A stretch of 63,586 nt of DNA, counting the filler, from Octopus bimaculoides (Eukaryota), in assembly GCF_001194135.2 (NCBI RefSeq). It is 3 parts of 2 records of this genome, joined end to end, with 100 filler letters (N's around TTAATTAATTAA, not from the genome) between each part and the next. Parts side by side here need not be neighbours in the genome. Positions count along the whole stretch, not along the records: positions 1 to 30,243 come from NC_069001.1; 2 more parts are not named here. One strand, given 5' to 3'. The notes under the pieces were generated by a model. The model had not been told where the DNA came from. It did no database searches and was given only the letters and a program-made list of their open reading frames with translations. Shown one piece after another: positions 12,656-23,848 of the stretch (the first letter of the stretch is position 1; each line of letters begins with the position of its first letter). The position numbers and the translations under genes were made by a program.

Positions 12656-13574
12656 AAACTGATTCTGTGTCCAATTTTCGCTAATGGATTCCTCATCTAG
12701 TTGTTAAGCTAGCGAGAGAGAGAGACAAGAGAGGAAACGGCACTGAAAGGCGGATTCATGTTATATGCCGGCCGGTATCAACCAGTCAGAACAAAAAGTC
12801 TAAAATTCATGTCTTCTCATTTTCTCACTTGCTGCATTCTATTTATTTTCACTCGCAAGATTATTTTTTCTTAATTCGTTGTCATCCTTCTATATTTCTC
12901 TTTGTTGTTTCGGATTATATTGTAATATATTAAATTAATTTGTGTGTATATATCTATCAAACTCTAGCCCTCTCTGTCTTTCTCTCTCTCTCTCTTTATA
13001 TACATATATATATGTATACACACACACACGTTTGTGATAGAGCTGACGATATAATTATGTTAAATTTGAGATTGAGTGGGGGTAGAGGTGGATGATGATT
13101 AATAATAATGCCCTAAGGTCATTTTTATTTTATAATTATAAGTTAGGTGGGAAAAAATATTATTTTTCAGTGCACGTGTTGATCGAAATAGTTTTTTTAA
13201 ATTTTATTTTATCATTGACTTAGTTGTATAAAATCGGGTTTATTTATCTTGTTAAAATTTGATGTTGAGGATTATAATTTACGTTTATAAGAGAAATTAT
13301 TCATACATTAGGTCTATAAATATGTGTGTATACATCGATGTCACATACTGAAGTTTGATCTATATAGATAGATCCCATTTTTAAACAAATTATTTTGAAT
13401 TTCAACTCTTCTCAGCACAATGTGGCATCTTAAATGTACTTAATACTGTGCTTACTCAGTGCGGCTTTATATAGTCTAACGTTTTTTTGTTTTTTTTACC
13501 AAGTTTCCTGCGAGCAGTCAGTGTCCTTACCTTATTCTCAGGCCTCTTCCATCATGTACGCACGCGTGTGTGTA

Positions 13575-13623
<49 letters not shown>

Positions 13624-15401
13624 GAGAAAGGGTGACTGCACGTTAGTACTTTGTACAAAATTAAAATATATAGTGTGGTATTAAAGCCGAAACTTTATAA
13701 TCGCTTTTTAGGGAATAAAGCTGTTGGATTAAAAAACAAAATAGTTTTCTTTTTACATATTGATGCCTTTTGTCGAATGAATGAGCAATTACAATGATTT
13801 GTTGTAAAATGTGATGGAAGAGCGTGAGGATAGGAAATGAATGTACACACGATATACAGGTATAAGTATATAACTAAATATGGGGGAAATAATGATATTG
13901 TTTATTTAAAAGTGGAATTTGGCTTTTGTAGGGTTTTTGTTACGCCGAAAAGCGGGTGGTGTATGTATATTTTACCTCCGCCAGTCTTCCTTGCTTTCAA
14001 TATTATTGTGAAACTTGTTAGAACGTCGGTGGAAAAAATGCTTTGCGGCATTCGTTCTGGGTTCAAATAATACGGCCGAGATTAACTTTGTTTTTCATCC
14101 CTTTCGGTGTCGATGTAATCGACTAACCCCCTACCTATAAAAAAAATTTCAGGCTTTGTGTCTATAATGTATAGAATTATCATTGTCAGACTTAATGGAG
14201 TTCTCTGGTGGTGGTAGTGGGGTGCTTTGCGGCTTTAGTTCCTGCTTCTTGACGTTCTGAGTTCAAATCCTGCATACGTTGATTTGCCTTTCATCCCTCC
14301 CAGTGTCGTTAAAATATTACTATGTGGCGGGTTAAATGGCATCGACGAAACCCGCTTCCCCTCAAAATTGCTGGCCTGTGATTTACCTCTACTAGAAATA
14401 GTTATTTACAAATCCATTTCTGAAATATCAAACAAGCAAGCTAGCGGTCTCGAACACGTTTTCGCAAGTTTCTTTCATATTTGCAGCCTCTTATGTGCCT
14501 TGTATGCGCGTGCGCCAGTTTGTCTCCTTCCCCCTTCATCCTTCGATGCCTTCAAGATTTGTAATATTGAAATGTTTTGACTGTTCATTAGTGATTTGTT
14601 AGTCTCCATCGTCACATATATGTGTGTTCACATAGATGTGCGTGTGTGTATGTATATTCAACGATCTTGTAACTAACTGCTGGTTCGTTCGCGCTTGCTT
14701 TTCTTTCATCCCGCTCCCTGCTTTTTTTCCCTCCTAAAACGTGTAACATAATACAAGGCCCACAGGGGTTTAGCTAACAAACCGTTACCGAAATTTTTTT
14801 TGTTTTTTTAATTTTCCTATTATAACATATTTGCCCCTTCACCGACGACTTCTAAGTTTTTTTTTTAAACATTAAATCTCGCAACATTTTGACTAGGAAA
14901 CTATAAAATTAAAAGCAATTCAGAATTTGTTATTGTTTTTGCAGTGCCATATGTCAAGTAATTTAATCAAAGATAATCCCTAATTAGAAAGTTGCAGTGA
15001 ATCATTGTTTAATTCATGATAACTAGATTGAAAATATAAATAAACAGTATTGAGAACAAAAATTCTCTATTCTTGGTGGTTTTAAAAAAATTTTTTTTTT
15101 AACTGTGAATCTTGGATTTAAAGAAAAACCGCTTTAGATACAAAAGGTCAATGGCTGTCGAGCATTTATTAATTTTTTTTTCTTTTCTAGTACATAAATG
15201 CTTTTATAGTTTGAAATCCAGCAAGTGATTTGATAACGCGAAGGAAAGTCGTGGTTGCAATTTTGTAGTTTTAAGGATTTGTGTGTGTGTTTAAAAAATG
15301 CTATTTCACTTAGCATTGGCTTGGATTTTGGTGTATGTCCTGTAAGTGATCAGTCGTTATTGGTAAATTGACCGTGTAATCATGATTTCTTTATCGGATG
15401 T

Positions 15402-15850
15402 CATTATCATGTAACGTCCACTTTTTTTTTTTTCACGCCAGCAAAGGTCAGACGGAATTTTTTGAGACAGACTATTCCATGGCCAGATACCCTTTGTGTC
15501 GCCAACCCTCACCTGTTTCCAAGCAACGTAATATTTTTCAATAACTGGGCATGTTTCTCGTAAAAGACTAAATTAATCTCGCTTGCCTCACCATGATGTT
15601 TATTTACAAGCATCACGTGATGTCTAGAACAAAGGTGCGCGCGGTCAGCACGTGTGTGTGTGTGTGTGTGTATCGTCGTTTCAATTTCCACTTTACCACG
15701 CTTGCATGGGTCGGACGGAATTTATCGATTTTTCTACAGCCGGGTGCCCTCCCTGTTGCCAGCCCTTACTTGTTTCCAAGTAAGGTAATATTTCCTTATG
15801 CTCAGACAATATTGAAAACCAAGGACACGTTTTTGCATGACAGTGACAGT
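15402..15850 (-). mobile_element. Two inverted copies of the RTE-tailed short element
   Basis: ACCTGTTTCCAAG / ACTTGTTTCCAAGTAAGGTAATATT and CTTGCATGGGTCGGACGGAATTT are reverse complements of the 735-905 element. Confidence 0.7.
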
Positions 15851-17693
15851 ACATATATGCATATTTAACAGGCTTCTTTCAGTTTATCCACTAAATCCAC
15901 TCACAGGGCTACAGTAGAAGGCACCCACCTTAGGTGCCACATAGACATACACACACGATGAGCTTCTTTCAGTTTCCGTTCACTAAGTCCACTCCTTAGG
16001 ATTTCGTCAGGCTGAGACTATAGATGACACTTGCCCAAGGTTCCCAAGACCGCAAGGTTGGGAATCAAGCTGTTTAACCATACAGCCAAGTCTGTAATTT
16101 TTCTGTTACTACTGTTGATATATTGCTTTCTATGTGGTTTTTAGTGAAGATATAATTTCTGCAGCTCACCACAGTATGTCGTTTCTCGTGCAAGGTTGTT
16201 TGATTCATATTTTAATTGTTACTAAAATTGGGACCTCTTGTCATTCAGGTGCTAAGAGGAACAAGTTGCATTAAGTGTCCTGCCTTCAGTTTTGGAGAAA
16301 CTCTGAGTTACGTAATTGATTTTTGGTTGAGTGATGTAAGGTCCTGCTGGTTTGTCATGACAATTCTATCATAAAGGGCAAATAATTTCTGTTCTTCCAT
16401 TGTGATCACTTACAACCTTTATTCTTAGCTATGCTTTATGGTCAAAATATAATTGAATGACCTTAGTCTGTGATAGCTACCGTAGCATACAATAACTTGT
16501 AACCTACAATAATTTTGGAGTATTTGTATTTTCGACTTCTAAAGTCGGAATGAATTCACTAGGACATGAAATGGTTACTTTCTTGAATAATAAATCTCAG
16601 TGTGTATGTTTTAGTATATGGTAAACCTATGATGCATGTTAGCAGTGGCGTGCAATGGACTAGAAGCAACATTACCTTGCTTGGTGACTAGAAGGGCATC
16701 CAGCCATAAAAGAATCCAACCATTCGTTGCCGGTTGAACGCCTATTGTGCAACAACCGACTGCACGTGGAGAGGAGCCAGGAAGCAACACCATGTTAAAG
16801 CTTATCTTCAAGCATTTATCTAAAATTAAAAGACTTAACCGTTTAGCATTTAAATTAACTATATCTAGCCAAGTCTGACCTCTCACACCTTCCCTACAAT
16901 GTCAGTCAAAAATTAAACAATCACATCGTTAAAATCTTGAAGCCACAACATAATGCATGATTAATTCAAAACAATGTGAATAAATAAGTATTACATTCAA
17001 CAGGTACTAAAAGCTAGTGTATTTGATGGCCTATAAGACGCAACTTTTTTACCCATAAAATCCCCTTATGTCCAGTGCACTCAGTGTATGCGCTCAAAAC
17101 ATATGCTACCATCTATTGGTGAACAATCGCCTATGGTATGTTTATATCGAATGTGGATGCAATAAATTGCTTGTAATTACTGGTAATAACAAAGTTATAC
17201 AGGTAAATGAAGGAATTAAAACATTATTTTAGTGCATCTTATAGGCCATCAAATACAGTACTTATTTTATATCCTCATAGACCTCCAATTCCTTGTTTGC
17301 ATTTAATGTTCCTCTGTTTGTCATTTGGGATGTGATTTAAAAGCAAAATGGGTGAAGTCTTACTGATTGTTAAAATTATCTTATTGAACTGGATTTTAGC
17401 CTTCCTATGCAGAGCCAATTGTTTGTTGGGTTTATAGTAGTAGTAATCATGATAACCAACTTGAAAGATTGTTGGTTCTAGTCTTGCTGCTGTGTTGTGT
17501 GTTTGTCCAAGGTAAATCTCACATCTTGCGATTCACTTAGATATTGTTGGGTAGTGTTAATTTGTTACTACATGCAACAGCAATGTAATTTTTGTATCTT
17601 CCCTGGTACCAGCTGTAAAGGACTGACGTCCTAACTTATTTAGTGTCCTCTCCATAAAACTATAGAGATTAAACACTGATTCATGATATAGAT

Positions 17694-18050
17694 GCAGGCG
17701 TGACTGTGTGGTAAGAAGCTTGCTTCCCAACCACATGGTTCTGGGCTTGGTCTCTCTCTGCATGGCACCTTCAGCAAGTGTTCTCTACTGTAGCCTTGGG
17801 CCGACCAATACCTCGTGAGTCAATTTGGTAGGTGGAAACTGAAAAACTTGTATGTGTATGCCTTTGTGTCTATGTCCCACCACTACCACCACATCTTGGT
17901 AGTTTGGCAAGAGTTCAATAGAATAAGTAACAAGCTTGAAGAGGGGGGGGAATTAAAATTAGTACTGGGGTCGATTCATTCAACTACGAATTCTTCAAGG
18001 CGGTGCCCCAGCATGACCGTAGTCTAATGACTGAAACAAGTAAAGCATCA
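17694..18050 (+). mobile_element. tRNA-derived SINE family A copy
   Basis: GCAGGCGTGACTGTGTGGTAAGAAGCTTGCTTCCC ... CAGCATGACCGTAGTCTAATGACTGAAACAAGTAAA. Confidence 0.85.
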
Positions 18051-20357
18051 AAAATATAACACATGGAAAGATTAAATATCTTCCCAAGTTCGTGACCTTA
18101 ACGTATAACCAGTCTGTCTACGAAGGGAGAGAACTCTAGAAGGTTGCAGCTTGAGAGAATATCGATTTTGAAACGTGTAAGAAAAAAATATCAATGTATT
18201 TTGTTTGAGTTGATAATGTAGCTTTCTAGCTCAAAGGAGCAGACTCTGTTCTGGTAGTGATAGAAGGGGCAGTTTTCATTGTCAGGTTTTTTTTAAATAT
18301 ACTCTTGAATATATGTGCATATAGCAGCAGTGCACCTTGTCTCATTTTTCTATGCCAAGTTCACATAATGATAATTCATTCCAAGTTATATGTTCTGATC
18401 AATCTCAGGATGGAATTTGCATTTGATGGACCAGTGTAAGGTGTCTACAGCTTTTATTTTATCACTTGTGTCCATTAGGTTATATTGTAAGGTGACATAG
18501 CTCCACAACCTGAAACTACAGAATCCTTCTATCAGTATTAGTTGACCGAATATTCCCCAAGTATAGCTTTATGAAAGACGAACTCTCGGGCTCGGCTATT
18601 TCCTGGAGATATAACTAAGACAAGGTGCAGGCATGGCTGCATAGTTAAGAGAAGTTGCTTTGGTACCATGTGGTTAGGGGTTCAGTCCCTCGGCATAGCC
18701 ACTGTTTGTGACCAATATCTTGTGAATGAAATTGATAGACAGAAACTGAAGTCCATCGTCATATTCTGTACATGAGAGTTGATGTTGCTCTCATCTTCAA
18801 ATGTGTGTGTATGTACATTCTCTGACTGTAAATAAGAGAGCCTCAATTCATACTGTTTTGTTTCCAGTCATTTTCAAAAGCATGTCTTGACTATTTATCT
18901 TCGTTTTTGCAGATGTTGGAAAGTAAATGTTCAATCAATGTTGAGAACAGTCTCATTTTGTTTGAGTATGTTCCCTTCTTTATAAGAAATGAATACACTT
19001 TCTTATAGTTATTGTGGCAATGAACCATTGAATGATATTTTGTATTATTCAACTTCAGCAAATCAGAATTATGGCTAGAAATAGTCAAATCAGTCCCTAA
19101 AACTTCGGAGAGAATAAACAAAGACGGCTTGAATACCTTTATTCATAGGGCTGGATTTAACCCTTTGTCAAATGTTATACTTATATGTTCATATTTTATA
19201 AAATTAATCCTGTATTATCTTGTAGCTTTGAGGTTTTGAAGATGTGATTGTTTATTTTTAGAATGACATTGCAGGGTAGGTGTGAGAGGCTGGATCTGGT
19301 TAGTTTGAACATGAAACAGGTAGAATATTGGGCTGGTTTAAATGCTAAAGCATTAAACATCAACACCTGTAATGTTTGACTTTTGTACCATCAATACTAT
19401 CAATGAAATATTAATTTCATTGATAGTATTTCTGAATATATTTGCATACTGGCGTCGATTTAATCTACCCTCCTCCAAAATTTCGGGCCTTGTGCCTAGA
19501 GTAGAAAAGCTATCAACTCGTTTTATATTTTTCATTTACCTGGCAAGTCAGACTGGCTTTGTGTGTGGAAATCTACACTGATACATCATCAGACTCAACT
19601 AGATGAGAGTAAATTACATTGATGAAGTCAAGATGACGAAAATATGCCAAATTCTCCTCTACCTGCAGGGAGGGACCACTATTTCCCTCCCTGCAAATTA
19701 ACTGAGAAATTAATTACCTGAAATTATCTCCCCTGCTCTTCGATAGTTTCTAATCATTGCCAAGCAATTCTTTCTTACTCAGAGTGAAATTTCTAAGAAT
19801 TATCATGAAAGTTTTGTATTGTTTGTTTGTAAAATATCAAAATATAGGGAAAATGTAAATATTAAAAATCATGTAGTGTTTGTCAGTAGAGATTAACAGT
19901 CCACCTTCTCAAAGAAAATATCCATTTTGAAATATTTGAACTACAAGTACTAATCAGGACCATTAATAATTACAGGGCCAGAAGGCAGTTATTTCAATCC
20001 TAATGCTGACATGCTTATTTTAAACTGTGGTGAATGACCAAGAAATTAAGTTGGTCAGTAGCACAAGAAAAAAACTATTTTATTTATTTACATCTTTATA
20101 ATCATTCTGTTTTACTATCAGCAATAAGTTATTGCTGCTGTTAATTCATTAAAATTATTAAGCTGCTGCTAAGTAGGTGGTTGCCTTTCTTGTATTTCTA
20201 TTTTTGTCATCATCACTTGTATGTAGTTATCTTACTCTTGCTAGTAAATACATTCAGTTTACTGTCAAATGTTATACTTATTTTTATTTATTCAAGTTGG
20301 TTTGAATTATGTATAGCTTCAATGATGTGATTATTTTTATTCTCTGGTCTTATCCAG

Positions 20358-20472
20358 AGTACAGCATCAGTGAAAGGAAACCCAGTCAGTTTTGTGTGAG
20401 TCTAGGTCTTTGACATGTCTCATTTATAGCAGATATATGTCCATTTGCTTATTTTCTGGTCTACATGATTTG
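20358..20472 (+). other. Candidate 5' UTR exon of paralog A
   Basis: Pyrimidine-rich acceptor TTATTTTTATTCTCTGGTCTTATCCAG ending at 20357 and a donor TTG|GTAAGT at 20473. No transcript evidence. Confidence 0.35.
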
Positions 20473-20618
20473 GTAAGTGGCCCACATAAACATTGGTCCC
20501 CTTCACTGGGCCTAGCAAGAGCCATCACTTTGATTCTCTTTCTCTCAGTATGAAGTTCATTTAAAGTTTGTTCTGCTCTTACTGCTGAGTGTTTGTAATC
20601 AACAAATCCAAATCCATA
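20465..20618 (-). pseudogene. Inverted partial copy of paralog A CDS (RRM1 RNP1 to RRM2 RNP2)
   Basis: By manual alignment the reverse complement matches 21768-21935 with 13 mismatches over 151 aligned nt, deletions of 6 and 11 nt and a 3-nt insertion. Confidence 0.93.
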
Positions 20619-21504
20619 CCTGCAACCTGGTGAATTCTGGGCTTGTACGTGAACAGTTCATCAGGATTCCCTTGCATCTCAAAATGTGGCTGATGCTGCT
20701 CATCGGTACCTTATGAAAATAGTTGCTCCACTCCCCTTATCTTAGACTTCTGAAAAGGTTCCATGTAGACTTCGTGGTATTAGATGTGGATGGCTTTGCC
20801 TGTATCTTTATCTTGGATTCAACTGCTTTTTTAATCAAGTTTTGTATATTAGCCCCACTTTTGTTACAGGCTTGTCTTGAACTGTTCTAGATTAAAAAGT
20901 TGTTTCAATTTACATTCCAAATACTTACTAATGATTAAGTTATTTTACTAAATTCTACCGAAGTTTCAAAATGGACTGGAACAAAAGCAGTGTATTTCCA
21001 CATAAGTGATAATTAAAGAATCCAATAAATCTTTTTATTGGAATTGAACTTGAAACCCGAGCAAAAGTAAAAAGAATCTAATATTTACTCTCTTGACAGT
21101 ATATTATTAGCATGTCTGATTTAGAACTCCTTTATACATACAATTACCATTAGAACCTAATTCAAAACTAAACACCCATCCTCTCCTAATGAGTTTTCTG
21201 ATATTAAGTTGTTGTTTTTTTTTTGTTATAGATTTACTTGATGTCTACATTCACAAGCACTCTCATCACAAATTCTGACAGAATATTCTTACATAGTTTA
21301 TAAATATATTTAAAAAAAAAAAATCCGTATTAATGTCTTAACACTGCTTCTGGAGTTTATGCAGTTACATCAGTAGTGAGTATTGAACTACACACATGAA
21401 AACGTGGTTTTTATTGCAACTGCGAAAAATAATTACCTACATCAATGAAGTTTATGTTTGTTTTGTTGTTTTGTTTTTTAATCTGTGATTGGATAATAGT
21501 CCAA

Positions 21505-21531
21505 TTAACTTTTCTTCTTTTACTTTTCTAG
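21505..21531 (+). promoter_or_regulatory. Splice acceptor of the paralog A coding exon
   Basis: TTAACTTTTCTTCTTTTACTTTTCTAG|G: long pyrimidine tract plus YAG|G, 71 nt before the ATG. Confidence 0.75.
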
Positions 21532-21579
21532 GGAGAAAAGCCCTGTGCAACTGTTAGCAATCACTGTGTTGGAGCTGTT

Positions 21580-21645
21580 ATGACAGACAAGGGACTGTTG
21601 CCATGGCAACAGAAGATCACTGTGAAGATAATGGTGGGAATCTAA
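21580..21645 (+). promoter_or_regulatory. Out-of-frame uORF overlapping the start of paralog A (MTDKGLLPWQQKITVKIMVGI*)
   Basis: ATG 23 nt upstream of the main ATG and downstream of the acceptor at 21531; stop TAA at 21643-21645. Confidence 0.5.
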
Positions 21646-22559
21646 CCAACTTAATAGTGAATTATATCCCACAAAGTCTTTCCAATGAAGAATTCCGAGC
21701 CATGTTCCTGACCATTGGTCCAATTAAGTCATCAAAAATAATTCAAGACAGGGCAACAGGATACAGCTATGGATTTGGATTTGTTGATTACGAACACCCA
21801 GAAGATGCTGCAAGAGCAGTTCAAACTTTAAATGGACTTCATATTGAGAACAAAAGAATCAAAGTGGCTCTTGCTAGGCCCAGTGGACTTGGAGTGAAGG
21901 GGGCCAATGTTTATGTGAGCCACTTACCAAATCATTATGCTCAGAGCGACCTTGTTAAGCTCTTTGAACCTTATGGTATTATCATCCGTTCCAGAATAAT
22001 GACTCATCCTAACACTAACCAATCTAAGGGAGTAGGCTTTGTTTTGTATGATCAGAAAAAAATGGCAGAAGCTGCCATTGCTGACTTGAATCAAACTATA
22101 CCTCCAGGTGGTAGTGAGCCAATAATAGTAAAATTTGCTAATGAAGCTCCCAATTCTAAAAAAACTCGCCCTCCACATGAACAATACATGAACAATAATA
22201 ACAGCATACAACAAACTTTCTCCACGCCTATGCTCATGCGTAATGAACGATTTACAAGTCCGGTGCCTGTCAATTACTCTCCTAACAACCCCAACCCTAA
22301 CCCAAATAATGACATGTCTAACAGTCCAGTGTTGTTTATCTACAACACTGGCAATATGGATGAATCTGACCTGGGCCAGCTTTTCTGCGGCTTTGGTACT
22401 GTGCAAAAGGCCAATATTGTGCGTGTACATCAGAAGACAAAAGGTTATGGCTTTGTCACGATGGCTAACCAACACGAAGCAGAAAATGCTGTCGGCAGGC
22501 TCAATGGATACCGCTATCGCGGTTGGGGACCTCTCCAAGTCTCTTTTAAAAACAAATAA
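21603..22559 (+). CDS. ELAV/Hu/Sex-lethal family RNA-binding protein with three RRMs (divergent paralog A), intron-free CDS, 318 aa
   Basis: RRM1 TNLIVNYIPQ...GYSYGFGFVDY, RRM2 NVYVSHLP...KGVGFV, hinge, RRM3 LFIYN...KGYGFVTM...LNGY...LQVSFK. Strong start context GCCATGG, in-frame TAG upstream at 21555-21557, and a splice acceptor TTTTCTAG ending at 21531. Confidence 0.95.
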   Translation: MATEDHCEDNGGNLTNLIVNYIPQSLSNEEFRAMFLTIGPIKSSKIIQDRATGYSYGFGFVDYEHPEDAARAVQTLNGLHIENKRIKVALARPSGLGVKGANVYVSHLPNHYAQSDLVKLFEPYGIIIRSRIMTHPNTNQSKGVGFVLYDQKKMAEAAIADLNQTIPPGGSEPIIVKFANEAPNSKKTRPPHEQYMNNNNSIQQTFSTPMLMRNERFTSPVPVNYSPNNPNPNPNNDMSNSPVLFIYNTGNMDESDLGQLFCGFGTVQKANIVRVHQKTKGYGFVTMANQHEAENAVGRLNGYRYRGWGPLQVSFKNK

Positions 22560-23329
22560 TTTACTTGAGTCTTATGGGTTATTTTCATTTACACCCCCCC
22601 TCTTTTTTTTATTTTTTACTTTTTTAGTTAAAAATATCTATACTCTTATTTTGTTTTACTATTAATTTACTTTTCGGCTTCTTTACTGTGGAATTTAAAA
22701 AACAAAAAGTGGCAATTGAAGCTGCTACCAACTGTGTATCACTTTGGAGGTGATTTCTCCTCCCCTTCCCTCTCAAAGGTTACAAAGTTATCAGTAATTT
22801 TAAGAAATGGCAGCTTCCCTTTCTTTTAACTTTATTATTACATATTGTTCTTAAGCTAATTAGTGGCAATACAATAGTTGTTGCATTTTCTTTTATTATG
22901 ATTATTATTATTTCTTTATAGTTACCTTGACTTATTTTCAAAAGAACTTAAAAAATGGTAACATCTTGTATTGATAGATGTGTGTTTAAAAAAAAAAAAG
23001 CAAAAACAAAAACTGATACTAAGGGATTAGCATGTTTTGTGGCTTCAATACACAAACGCAGCAGTTTGACAAAAAAAAAAACAAAAAAATAGCACCCCTA
23101 ATGTAATTTCATTTCACCTCCCCCTTTTTGTTTTTAATTTATTGAATTTTTAAATTTATTTTTATACGTTTTCCTCCCAAAAACCTTTTTTCTCCCCTTC
23201 CTCTCTCTCTCTCTCTTTTTAGTAAGAACGCAAGCATTCTTGCAAATGTCCATATTAAGGCAGAAAATATTGGTTTGACTGGTCCACTATTCATTATTCA
23301 ATTATGTTAGGTGTCTTCATGAATGTATG

Positions 23330-23610
23330 AATAAAAAAAGCAAAAACAACAAAAACATCTCAGATCATTCCTTGTAATATTTTCTAATAAATAAATTCTG
23401 CTGGCTGTAATGCTGCCACAAAAATTGTTTTGCTCCAGTGCTTCTCTCCTCCCTCCCTCACCACATTGCTAAGGCAATCATGACTTTGAATTATATATTT
23501 CCCTTCCCTCTTTTTCTTCTCCATTTCAGTTCCTGAAATCATTTGAAGAATCTTATAAAGAACTGTCTTGGTACAATAAATATATTGACTCAAGCTGACT
23601 TGGTGTGTTC
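23330..23610 (+). terminator. Cluster of candidate polyadenylation signals for paralog A
   Basis: AATAAA at 23330, 23386/23390 and 23575. TGTA precedes the first; a GT-rich TTGGTGTGTT follows the last. Confidence 0.5.
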
Positions 23611-23842
23611 CTTCACCTCATCTGATATATATATGTGTGTATATATCTAAATGTAAGAATAAGCCAGATGTTGATAAAGTTGAAACTGGAATCTGTAACT
23701 TAAATTCAAAATTAGCTCTTCAAATGCGAAGTCTCTGGGTTAACTCTCCGTGCTGAAGCATGCCTTCAGAATATAAAACAAGTGAATTAATAAGTAAAAA
23801 CCCATTAAACTTTCAAATAGCACAAATCAAAATGGTGCTTAC

Positions 23843-23848
23843 TTTATT
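23843..23848 (-). terminator. Candidate distal polyadenylation signal for paralog B
   Basis: AATAAA on the minus strand followed by U/GU-rich sequence. It would give a 3' UTR of about 4.2 kb. Other minus-strand AATAAA occur closer to the stop codon. Confidence 0.3.

What the first reader, a model, noticed from the sequence alone, without database searches (positions are those of the whole stretch)
20465..21935. ELAV paralog A has an inverted copy of its own coding sequence upstream: a built-in fold-back (candidate ADAR exon-complementary sequence)
Seen: the reverse complement of 20465-20618 matches CDS 21768-21935 (RRM1 RNP1 through RRM2 RNP2) at about 91% (13 mismatches over 151 aligned nt, three small indels). 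It lies upstream of the 21531 acceptor, so probably in the intron. The ORF track does not show it. Established: intronic ECS elements pairing with exons direct ADAR A-to-I recoding (e.g. GluA2 Q/R), and coleoid cephalopods recode neural transcripts extensively. Inference: a pre-mRNA starting upstream of 20465 would form a roughly 150-bp imperfect duplex closing a loop of about 1.15 kb. A gene-derived inverted duplication would thus have created an editing, splicing or endo-siRNA switch on an ELAV/Sxl-family regulator.
Basis: partly seen in the sequence, partly recalled or inferred. Interest (0 to 1): 0.92.

Follow-up and report, generated by a model that had tools for sequence, protein, structure and literature searches.

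The report
Decaying inverted self-copy in ELAV intron
An octopus ELAV-family RNA-binding-protein gene carries, inside its own upstream intron, a broken backwards copy of about 170 bases of its coding sequence; the copy could pair with the exon in the unspliced RNA, but it drifts like ordinary intron DNA, so it is most likely a harmless duplication relic and not a built-in editing switch.

Summary
Window 20465-20632 is an inverted copy of CDS 21754-21935 of ELAV paralog A (about 90% identity, three indels, blastn E 1e-43). The window is Octopus bimaculoides chromosome CM046621.1.

A spliced transcript from a congener joins an exon at 10719-10758 to the acceptor at 21531. The arm therefore lies in a 10.8-kb 5'UTR intron of the same pre-mRNA. 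Folding predicts an arm-exon duplex of about 150 bp (-233 kcal/mol, against -86 for shuffled arms).

The arm is also present at the orthologous site in O. vulgaris. It is absent from Argonauta hians and from decapodiform loci, so it arose on the Octopus lineage.

It shows no sign of selection:
- Between the two Octopus species it diverges at the intron background rate (8.1% against 8.2-8.9%; CDS 1.1%).
- Each lineage has its own deletions.
- Its substitutions ignore codon position and do not favour keeping base pairs.

No matched RNA and DNA data could be reached, so editing is untested. The best reading is a neutrally decaying inverted gene-fragment insertion. It is a plausible but incidental dsRNA or ADAR substrate, not a demonstrated exon-complementary sequence.

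The parts
10719..10758 (+). 3' part of the non-coding first exon (5'UTR) of ELAV paralog A; donor G|GTTAGT begins at 10759
   Evidence: The first 41 nt of transcript contig L003 match this stretch 41/41 and then continue at the 21531 acceptor. The canonical GT donor is read directly from the sequence.
10759..21531 (+). 5'UTR intron of paralog A (10,773 nt, GT-AG); it contains the inverted arm
   Evidence: The acceptor ttttctAG|GGAGAAAAG is conserved in O. vulgaris and Argonauta hians.
20465..20632 (-). Inverted arm: a frameshifted, non-coding copy of codons 51-111 of paralog A. The CDS-like sense is on the minus strand. It is transcribed as part of the + strand intron and so is complementary to the exon.
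   Evidence: Orthologous copy in O. vulgaris at L006 8838-8972.
20633..21753 (+). Loop of about 1.12 kb closed by the predicted duplex. It holds the branch region, the 3' splice site (21531), the 5'UTR of exon 2 and the start codon (21603).
   Evidence: MFE and centroid folds of 20450-21949.
21754..21935 (+). Exonic target of the arm: source of the copy, from RRM1 RNP1 to RRM2 RNP2
   Evidence: Cofold gives -233.1 kcal/mol and 149 intermolecular bp, against -85.7 +/- 4.5 for shuffled arms.
21603..22559 (+). Intronless CDS of ELAV-family paralog A (318 aa, three RRMs)
   Evidence: TIGR01661 ELAV_HUD_SF scores 285.8 bits, above the 279.1 cut-off. The encoded protein is identical in O. vulgaris and in a third Octopus species' transcripts.
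28022..28948 (-). ELAV-family paralog B (308 aa), convergent neighbour; context only, not part of the fold-back
   Evidence: 73% nucleotide identity to A over 276 nt.

Best explanation
A piece of about 180 nt of paralog A's own coding sequence was copied in inverted orientation into the gene's 5'UTR intron, 1.1 kb upstream of its source. This happened on the Octopus lineage, after the split from Argonauta and before the O. bimaculoides / O. vulgaris split. The mechanism was probably a templated or fold-back repair insertion at the DNA level; that is inference. The copy never served as coding sequence and has since drifted as ordinary intron DNA. Because it is transcribed within the same pre-mRNA, an imperfect intron-exon duplex of about 150 bp is expected to form briefly, between transcription of the exon and removal of the intron. 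That helix is long enough to be bound and promiscuously deaminated by ADAR. Any such editing is most likely an incidental, low-level by-product and not a selected switch. Shown: the copy, its intronic position, its age bracket, its neutral evolution and the predicted duplex. Inferred: that the duplex forms in vivo, and that its effect is negligible.
For: 1. The copy is real and highly non-random.
2. It is intronic in the same transcript.
3. It is orthologous in O. vulgaris. The two arms share an 11-nt deletion and 7-8 substitutions. Each also has private lesions: a 6-nt deletion and 5 substitutions in O. bimaculoides, and deletions of 13 nt and about 20-26 nt plus 2 substitutions in O. vulgaris.
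4. Between-species substitution divergence of the arm is 8.1%, with 33 of 168 nt gapped. The flanking intron is at 8.2-8.9%, the CDS at 1.1% and the 3' non-coding DNA at 0.5-3%.
5. Arm-versus-CDS mismatches fall 4/7/5 on codon positions 1/2/3, so there is no coding constraint. Only 4 of 16 are wobble-compatible, so there is no excess of pair-preserving change.
6. The O. vulgaris CDS changes inside the target are not matched by arm changes, so nothing is compensatory.
7. There is no arm in Argonauta hians, which has the same 5'UTR acceptor and 6.7 kb of upstream sequence in hand, nor in decapodiform loci. At 16 of 16 informative sites the arms carry the Octopus state and not the Argonauta state.
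8. The duplex is strongly predicted in both species.
Against: A long dsRNA needs only overall complementarity, so a neutral substitution rate does not exclude a function. Both species still keep a very stable predicted duplex (-233 and -192 kcal/mol). Seven of the ten O. vulgaris-lineage synonymous changes in the CDS fall inside the 182-nt target (binomial P = 6e-4). The arm also carries more gapped bases than its flanks. Together these could mean selection is acting on the pairing. No same-species RNA/DNA comparison was possible, so appreciable editing, siRNA production or a splicing effect is not excluded. Only two genomes carry the arm.
Confidence: 0.6

Rival explanations
1. Functional fold-back: the intronic arm is a selected exon-complementary sequence that recruits ADAR to recode RRM1/RRM2, or that modulates splicing or nuclear retention of ELAV paralog A.
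For: The architecture is right: intronic arm, same pre-mRNA, a loop of about 1.1 kb containing the 3' splice site and AUG, and a duplex of about 150 bp. It is retained with a strong predicted duplex in two species. Coleoids edit coding sequence heavily in neural tissue (PMC9068888).
Against: The arm evolves at the neutral rate, has lineage-specific deletions and shows no compensatory or wobble-biased change. It is absent from Argonauta and squids, whose orthologous protein is 94% and 82% identical and so works without it. Transcripts of a third Octopus species encode the unedited protein. In squid, editing is reported as enriched in CDS and 3'UTR relative to introns and 5'UTR.
Confidence: 0.15
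2. Mildly deleterious self-dsRNA under selection to be broken up: the duplex causes unwanted hyper-editing or RNAi of an essential regulator, and both partners are accumulating pair-breaking changes.
For: On the O. vulgaris lineage, 7 of 10 synonymous CDS changes lie in the 182-nt target (P = 6e-4). Five lie in paired positions (four break a pair, one becomes a wobble) and two lie opposite the arm's shared 11-nt deletion. None matches the arm. The O. vulgaris arm lost about 33 nt. The predicted duplex weakens from -233 to -192 kcal/mol. The gapped fraction is 20% in the arm against 8% in the flanking intron.
Against: The numbers are small. O. bimaculoides shows no such CDS cluster. The arm's substitution rate is not raised above the intron rate. 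A local mutation cluster or an unseen gene-conversion donor would explain the pattern equally well.
Confidence: 0.1
3. The arm belongs to something on the minus strand: an exon of an antisense transcript, or a fragment carried in by a mobile element.
For: The CDS-like sense is on the minus strand. A weak flanking direct repeat TTCTGGTCT / TTCTGGGCT could be a target-site duplication.
Against: The frame is broken and lacks a start. No minus-strand gene is called there in either annotated genome. There is no poly(A). The flanking repeat is not significant (P about 0.06). No other copy of the flanks exists in the window, and there is no Rfam family.
Confidence: 0.04
4. Assembly artefact (chimeric fold-back read).
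For: Inverted duplications can be produced by library or assembly artefacts.
Against: The arm is 10% diverged from its source and carries indels. It is found at the orthologous site in an independent O. vulgaris assembly, with shared derived changes.
Confidence: 0.01

Closest known systems
Intronic exon-complementary sequences (ECS) that direct site-specific ADAR editing, such as the GRIA2 Q/R site or Drosophila ion-channel ECSs (from established knowledge)
   Same: An intronic segment in the same pre-mRNA is complementary to coding exon sequence. The duplex must form before splicing.
   Different: Classical ECSs are short, lie close to the edited exon, are conserved as strongly as the exon, and are tied to a defined edited adenosine. 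This arm is a 170-nt gene-derived copy that evolves neutrally, is lineage-specific and has no demonstrated editing site.
Long inverted-repeat dsRNA in introns or UTRs (for example inverted Alu pairs) that is promiscuously hyper-edited; in squid, the 'ubiquitous' intronic and 3'UTR editing over repeats (PMC9068888)
   Same: A long, imperfect intramolecular duplex formed by two inverted copies; expected to be edited non-specifically; no selection on the sequence.
   Different: Here one arm is the gene's own coding exon and not a second repeat copy, so promiscuous editing would hit codons of RRM1 and RRM2.
Hairpin-RNA (hpRNA) endo-siRNA loci of Drosophila and young plant MIRNA genes, born by inverted duplication of their target genes (from memory; not tested here)
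   Same: The origin: an inverted duplicate of a fragment of a protein-coding gene, giving a long hairpin complementary to that gene.
   Different: Those loci carry both arms outside the parent gene and act in trans through Dicer products. Here there is a single arm acting in cis, and no small-RNA evidence.
Pseudogene fragments or templated insertions from nearby sequence made during DNA repair
   Same: Short, non-coding, frameshifted, neutrally decaying, and lying close to its template.
   Different: Its inverted orientation inside the parent transcription unit gives it an RNA-level consequence that most such fragments lack.

Membership tests
ADAR exon-complementary sequence (ECS) | Intronic sequence of the same pre-mRNA, complementary to exon sequence | tested here: met
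   Inverted match, E 1e-43. Spliced contig L003 places the arm inside intron 10759-21531. The transcript evidence comes from a congeneric species.
ADAR exon-complementary sequence (ECS) | Forms a stable duplex with the exon | tested here: met
   In silico only. The MFE and centroid of the 1.5-kb fold pair the arms end to end. Cofold gives -233 kcal/mol, against -86 +/- 4.5 for shuffled arms. O. vulgaris gives -192 kcal/mol.
ADAR exon-complementary sequence (ECS) | A-to-I editing at exonic adenosine(s) that depends on the element | not testable with these tools
   No same-species RNA/DNA pair could be reached. Transcripts of a third Octopus species encode the unchanged protein. Their A>G differences from the genome at 21755 and 21887 cannot be told apart from species differences.
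ADAR exon-complementary sequence (ECS) | Conservation of the element well above intron background, with pairing maintained | tested here: not met
   The arm diverges 8.1% and is 20% gapped, against 8.2-8.9% in flanking intron and 1.1% in the CDS. Deletions are lineage-specific. Only 4 of 16 changes are wobble-compatible and none is compensatory. The arm is absent in Argonauta and decapodiforms.
hpRNA / inverted-duplication-derived small-RNA locus | Inverted duplicate of a target-gene fragment, with both arms in one transcript | tested here: met
hpRNA / inverted-duplication-derived small-RNA locus | Dicer-dependent small RNAs of about 21-22 nt from the arms | not testable with these tools
Processed pseudogene (retrocopy) | Poly(A) tract at the 3' end and flanking target-site duplication | tested here: not met
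   There is no A-run at either junction. The best flanking direct repeat, TTCTGGTCT / TTCTGGGCT, is reached by 5.9% of random intron positions.
ELAV/Hu family (TIGR01661), host gene | Whole-protein score above the curated cut-off; three RRMs | tested here: met
   A scores 285.8 bits and B 337.2 bits, against a 279.1 cut-off. PF00076 is recorded three times.
Sex-lethal family (TIGR01659), host gene | Whole-protein score above the curated cut-off | tested here: not met
   A scores 194.9 bits and B 224.7 bits, against a 486.2 cut-off. A GenBank submitter names a squid protein in the 90%-identity cluster of A's closest squid relative 'sex lethal' (UZQ18772.1).

The most novel reading that the evidence does not exclude
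The arm is a young, Octopus-specific self-targeting hairpin. In unspliced pre-mRNA it exposes the RRM1-RRM2 codons of an ELAV-family regulator to ADAR hyper-editing or Dicer. That pairing matters for fitness. Either it is exploited as a lineage-specific tuning device, or it is being dismantled, as suggested in O. vulgaris by the cluster of pair-breaking synonymous changes in the target together with the two arm deletions.
Probability: 0.12. Interest if true: 0.7.

Novelty: new member of a known kind. Interest (0 to 1): 0.33.

Why it matters
If the duplex is edited in vivo, this would be a dated case of a coding exon gaining a long ADAR substrate through a single inverted self-duplication, in an animal group famous for recoding. 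Natural controls exist: the arm is intact in O. bimaculoides, partly deleted in O. vulgaris, and absent in Argonauta and squids. That would show how editing substrates are born and whether new ones are adaptive or merely tolerated. As the evidence stands it is an ordinary decaying gene fragment in an unusual position. It is worth one look in existing RNA-seq data and does not justify a functional claim.

Tried and rejected
**RNA or DNA contigs covering the arm.** I looked up the exact products of three small ORFs in and beside the arm. None is on record.

**Edited protein variants.**
- The 90%-identity cluster of protein A has only two members, neither a variant.
- A search with the first 150 residues found no Octopus fragments. 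It did lead to the Argonauta locus.

**Published editing tables.**
- Liscovitch-Brauer 2017 is not held.
- The stored part of the Zhang 2023 recoding table has no ELAV or Sex-lethal row for octopus. That file is cut, so this is not evidence of absence.

**Identity of the runs behind the transcripts (SRR11869385-91).** No paper cites them. I call the source 'a third Octopus species', based on 95-96% nucleotide identity to O. bimaculoides and 94-95% to O. vulgaris.

**Literature on a cephalopod 'sex lethal' gene.** Nothing was found.

**Other ideas tested and set aside.**
- Target-site duplication: not significant.
- Gene conversion from the arm as the cause of the O. vulgaris CDS cluster: rejected, because no derived state matches either arm.
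- Conversion from paralog B: only 3 of 7 states match.
- Known RNA families: none in the window.
- Pfam on the retroelement-like ORFs at 7067-7931: no hit.
- More octopod genomes through paralog B's exact protein: only the same two genomes came back.

Full report
**Source of the window.** The exact 318-aa product of the ORF at 21603-22559 is encoded on Octopus bimaculoides chromosome CM046621.1 (GCA_001194135.2). The fetched locus L001 is identical to the window over all 18,641 comparable bases. The piece holds two ELAV-family genes with intronless coding sequences. Paralog A is at 21603-22559 (+, 318 aa). Paralog B is at 28022-28948 (-, 308 aa). They face tail to tail and are 58% identical as proteins. 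Both pass the curated cut-off of TIGR01661 (ELAV/HuD) and fail that of TIGR01659 (Sex-lethal). A GenBank submitter named a squid protein in the 90%-identity cluster of A's closest squid relative 'sex lethal'.

- The repeat finder reports four collinear inverted segments that together join 20465-20632 to 21754-21935.
- In an all-against-all blastn of the window, this is the strongest repeat of the whole piece (E 1e-43).
- The gapped alignment has 16 mismatches in 162 columns (90.1%). Relative to the CDS the arm carries an 11-nt deletion, a 3-nt insertion and a 6-nt deletion.
- Read on the minus strand, the arm translates as ...RYGFGFVDYKHSAVRAEQTLNELHTERKRIKVMALARPS and then loses the frame. 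It is therefore a non-coding fragment of codons 51-111, from RNP1 of RRM1 to RNP2 of RRM2.

**The arm is in the gene's own pre-mRNA.** Four assembled transcript contigs (Logan, SRR11869386-91) encode exactly the same protein. They are 95-96% identical in nucleotides to the window and 94-95% identical to O. vulgaris, so they come from a third Octopus species.
- One contig, L003, begins with 41 nt that match window 10719-10759 perfectly. It then continues at the AG acceptor at 21530-21531.
- The window has a canonical donor, G|GTTAGT, at 10759.
- The other three contigs start exactly at that junction.

Paralog A therefore has a non-coding first exon and a 10,773-nt 5'UTR intron (10759-21531), and the arm lies inside it, 900 nt upstream of the acceptor. 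One caveat applies: the transcript comes from a congener, and O. bimaculoides transcripts themselves could not be reached.

**The fold-back is physically plausible.**
- Folding 20450-21949 as one RNA pairs the two arms end to end in both the minimum-free-energy and the centroid structures.
- As a two-strand problem, the arm and target give -233.1 kcal/mol with 149 intermolecular pairs. Uninterrupted runs reach 30 bp. One hundred shuffled arms give -85.7 +/- 4.5 kcal/mol.
- The loop of about 1.1 kb contains the branch region, the 3' splice site and the start codon.

**Age of the arm.**
- The orthologous O. vulgaris locus (L006, GCA_951406725.2) is collinear with the window, and the arm sits at the same place.
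- The two arms share an 11-nt deletion and 7-8 substitutions relative to the coding sequences. This points to a single origin before the species split.
- Argonauta hians (L027) has the same A/B gene pair. Its A protein is 94% identical, and it has the same acceptor about 70 nt upstream of the ATG. It has no inverted copy in the 6.7 kb of upstream sequence fetched.
- A decapodiform genomic contig (L017) and squid contigs (L018, L019) also lack the arm.
- At all 16 informative sites where the Octopus coding sequence differs from Argonauta, the arms carry the Octopus state. Four of these are sites where Octopus is derived relative to both Argonauta and squid.

The copy was therefore made on the Octopus lineage, after the split from Argonauta.

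**Is the arm under selection?** Every test that could be run says no.
- Between O. bimaculoides and O. vulgaris the arm differs at 8.1% of aligned sites, and 33 of its 168 bases fall in gaps. The 82 nt before it differ at 8.9% and the 899 nt after it at 8.2%. The intron further upstream ranges from 5 to 15%. The CDS differs at 1.1%, and much of the 3' non-coding DNA at 0.5-3%.
- Each lineage has damaged its own copy. O. bimaculoides lost 6 nt that O. vulgaris keeps. O. vulgaris lost 13 nt and a further 20-26 nt that O. bimaculoides keeps.
- The 16 arm-versus-CDS mismatches fall 4/7/5 on codon positions 1/2/3, so the copy was never constrained as coding sequence.
- Only 4 of the 16 are changes that would keep a G-U pair. 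That is no more than chance, and no change in the exon is matched by a change in the arm.
- True exon-complementary sequences are defined by conservation comparable to the exon (established knowledge). That feature was tested and not met.
- Even so, the damaged O. vulgaris arm is still predicted to pair with its exon (-192 kcal/mol, 123 bp; 119 of 135 arm bases paired to the target in the 1.5-kb fold). Neutral drift has not yet abolished the duplex.

**One observation does not fit neatly.** Ten synonymous substitutions are assignable to the O. vulgaris lineage across the 957-nt CDS. Seven of them lie in the 182-nt arm target (binomial P = 6e-4; Fisher P = 0.0013 on all eleven differences). None copies the state of either arm, so this is not arm-to-exon gene conversion. 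Of the five in paired positions, four break a pair and one becomes a wobble; the other two lie opposite the arm's shared 11-nt deletion. Together they cost about 13-18 kcal/mol. The third Octopus species shows no such excess (2 of 16 fixed differences fall in the target). This could be chance clustering, an unseen conversion donor, or selection against the pairing. I rank the last as a minority reading.

**Editing was not tested.**
- No same-species RNA/DNA comparison was reachable.
- The key cephalopod editing tables were either not held or stored truncated.
- The available transcripts show no non-synonymous difference anywhere in the CDS. This argues only against majority-level recoding in that third species, whose arm status is unknown.
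- For context, in squid the neural, recoding class of sites is concentrated in coding sequence, while intronic and 3'UTR sites mostly overlap repeats and are edited ubiquitously. Editing is enriched in CDS and 3'UTR relative to introns and 5'UTR (PMC9068888).

**Verdict.** It would make an unusually long intron-exon helix. The evidence favours a neutrally decaying inverted gene-fragment insertion (probability about 0.6). A selected editing or splicing device is less likely (about 0.15), as is a duplex under selection to be dismantled (about 0.1). It is a new example of a known kind: an inverted-repeat dsRNA former and gene-fragment duplicate. Its interest is as a cheap, well-controlled test case in existing RNA-seq data, not as an established regulatory element.

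Noticed in passing
window 21754-21935 against L006 10053-10234: Seven of the ten O. vulgaris-lineage synonymous substitutions in the 957-nt CDS of paralog A cluster in the 182-nt stretch that pairs with the arm (P = 6e-4). None matches the arm or consistently matches paralog B.
   Followed up: partly
window 22630-23829 and 26230-29429: Non-coding DNA downstream of both ELAV genes differs from O. vulgaris at only 0.2-2.6% of sites, against about 8% in the intron. These are probably long, strongly constrained 3'UTRs or regulatory sequence.
   Followed up: no
window 21603-28948; L006; L017 10001-16752; L027 10001-17516: The tail-to-tail pair of ELAV-family genes A and B, both with intronless coding sequences, is kept in Octopus, Argonauta and a decapodiform. 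It is therefore an old coleoid arrangement.
   Followed up: partly
window 20472-20478: The inverted copy creates a consensus 5' splice-site motif, G|GTAAGT, on the transcribed strand (reverse complement of CAC TTA CC). AG dinucleotides lie about 45-50 nt upstream, and all of this is conserved in O. vulgaris. It could define a cryptic exon, but no transcript shows its use.
   Followed up: no
L018 1749-2702 (+) and 3871-4455 (-): One 4.9-kb squid contig from a sequencing-run assembly carries orthologue A and part of B on opposite strands only about 1.2 kb apart. If it is RNA, the convergent transcripts may overlap.
   Followed up: no
L006 1-9944 and 10001-10858: The O. vulgaris annotation splits gene A into a 78-aa product that ends just inside the CDS and a 285-aa product that starts at an internal Met. 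The full 318-aa frame is intact and identical to that of O. bimaculoides.
   Followed up: yes
L027 16530-17516: Argonauta hians protein A is 328 aa. The extra residues are expansions of the Pro and Pro-Asn repeats in the linker before RRM3.
   Followed up: no
window 5170-6082, 9041-9295, 17694-18064; 7067-7931 (-); 8747-8820: There are several diverged copies of an interspersed repeat of about 250-400 nt. There are also overlapping minus-strand ORFs that look like a retroelement remnant, with no Pfam hit, and an assembly gap of 74 N.
   Followed up: partly
window 20445-20464 and 20633-20652: A short direct repeat, TTCTGGTCT / TTCTGGGCT, flanks the arm and could be a target-site duplication. 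Matches this good occur at 5.9% of random intron positions.
   Followed up: yes
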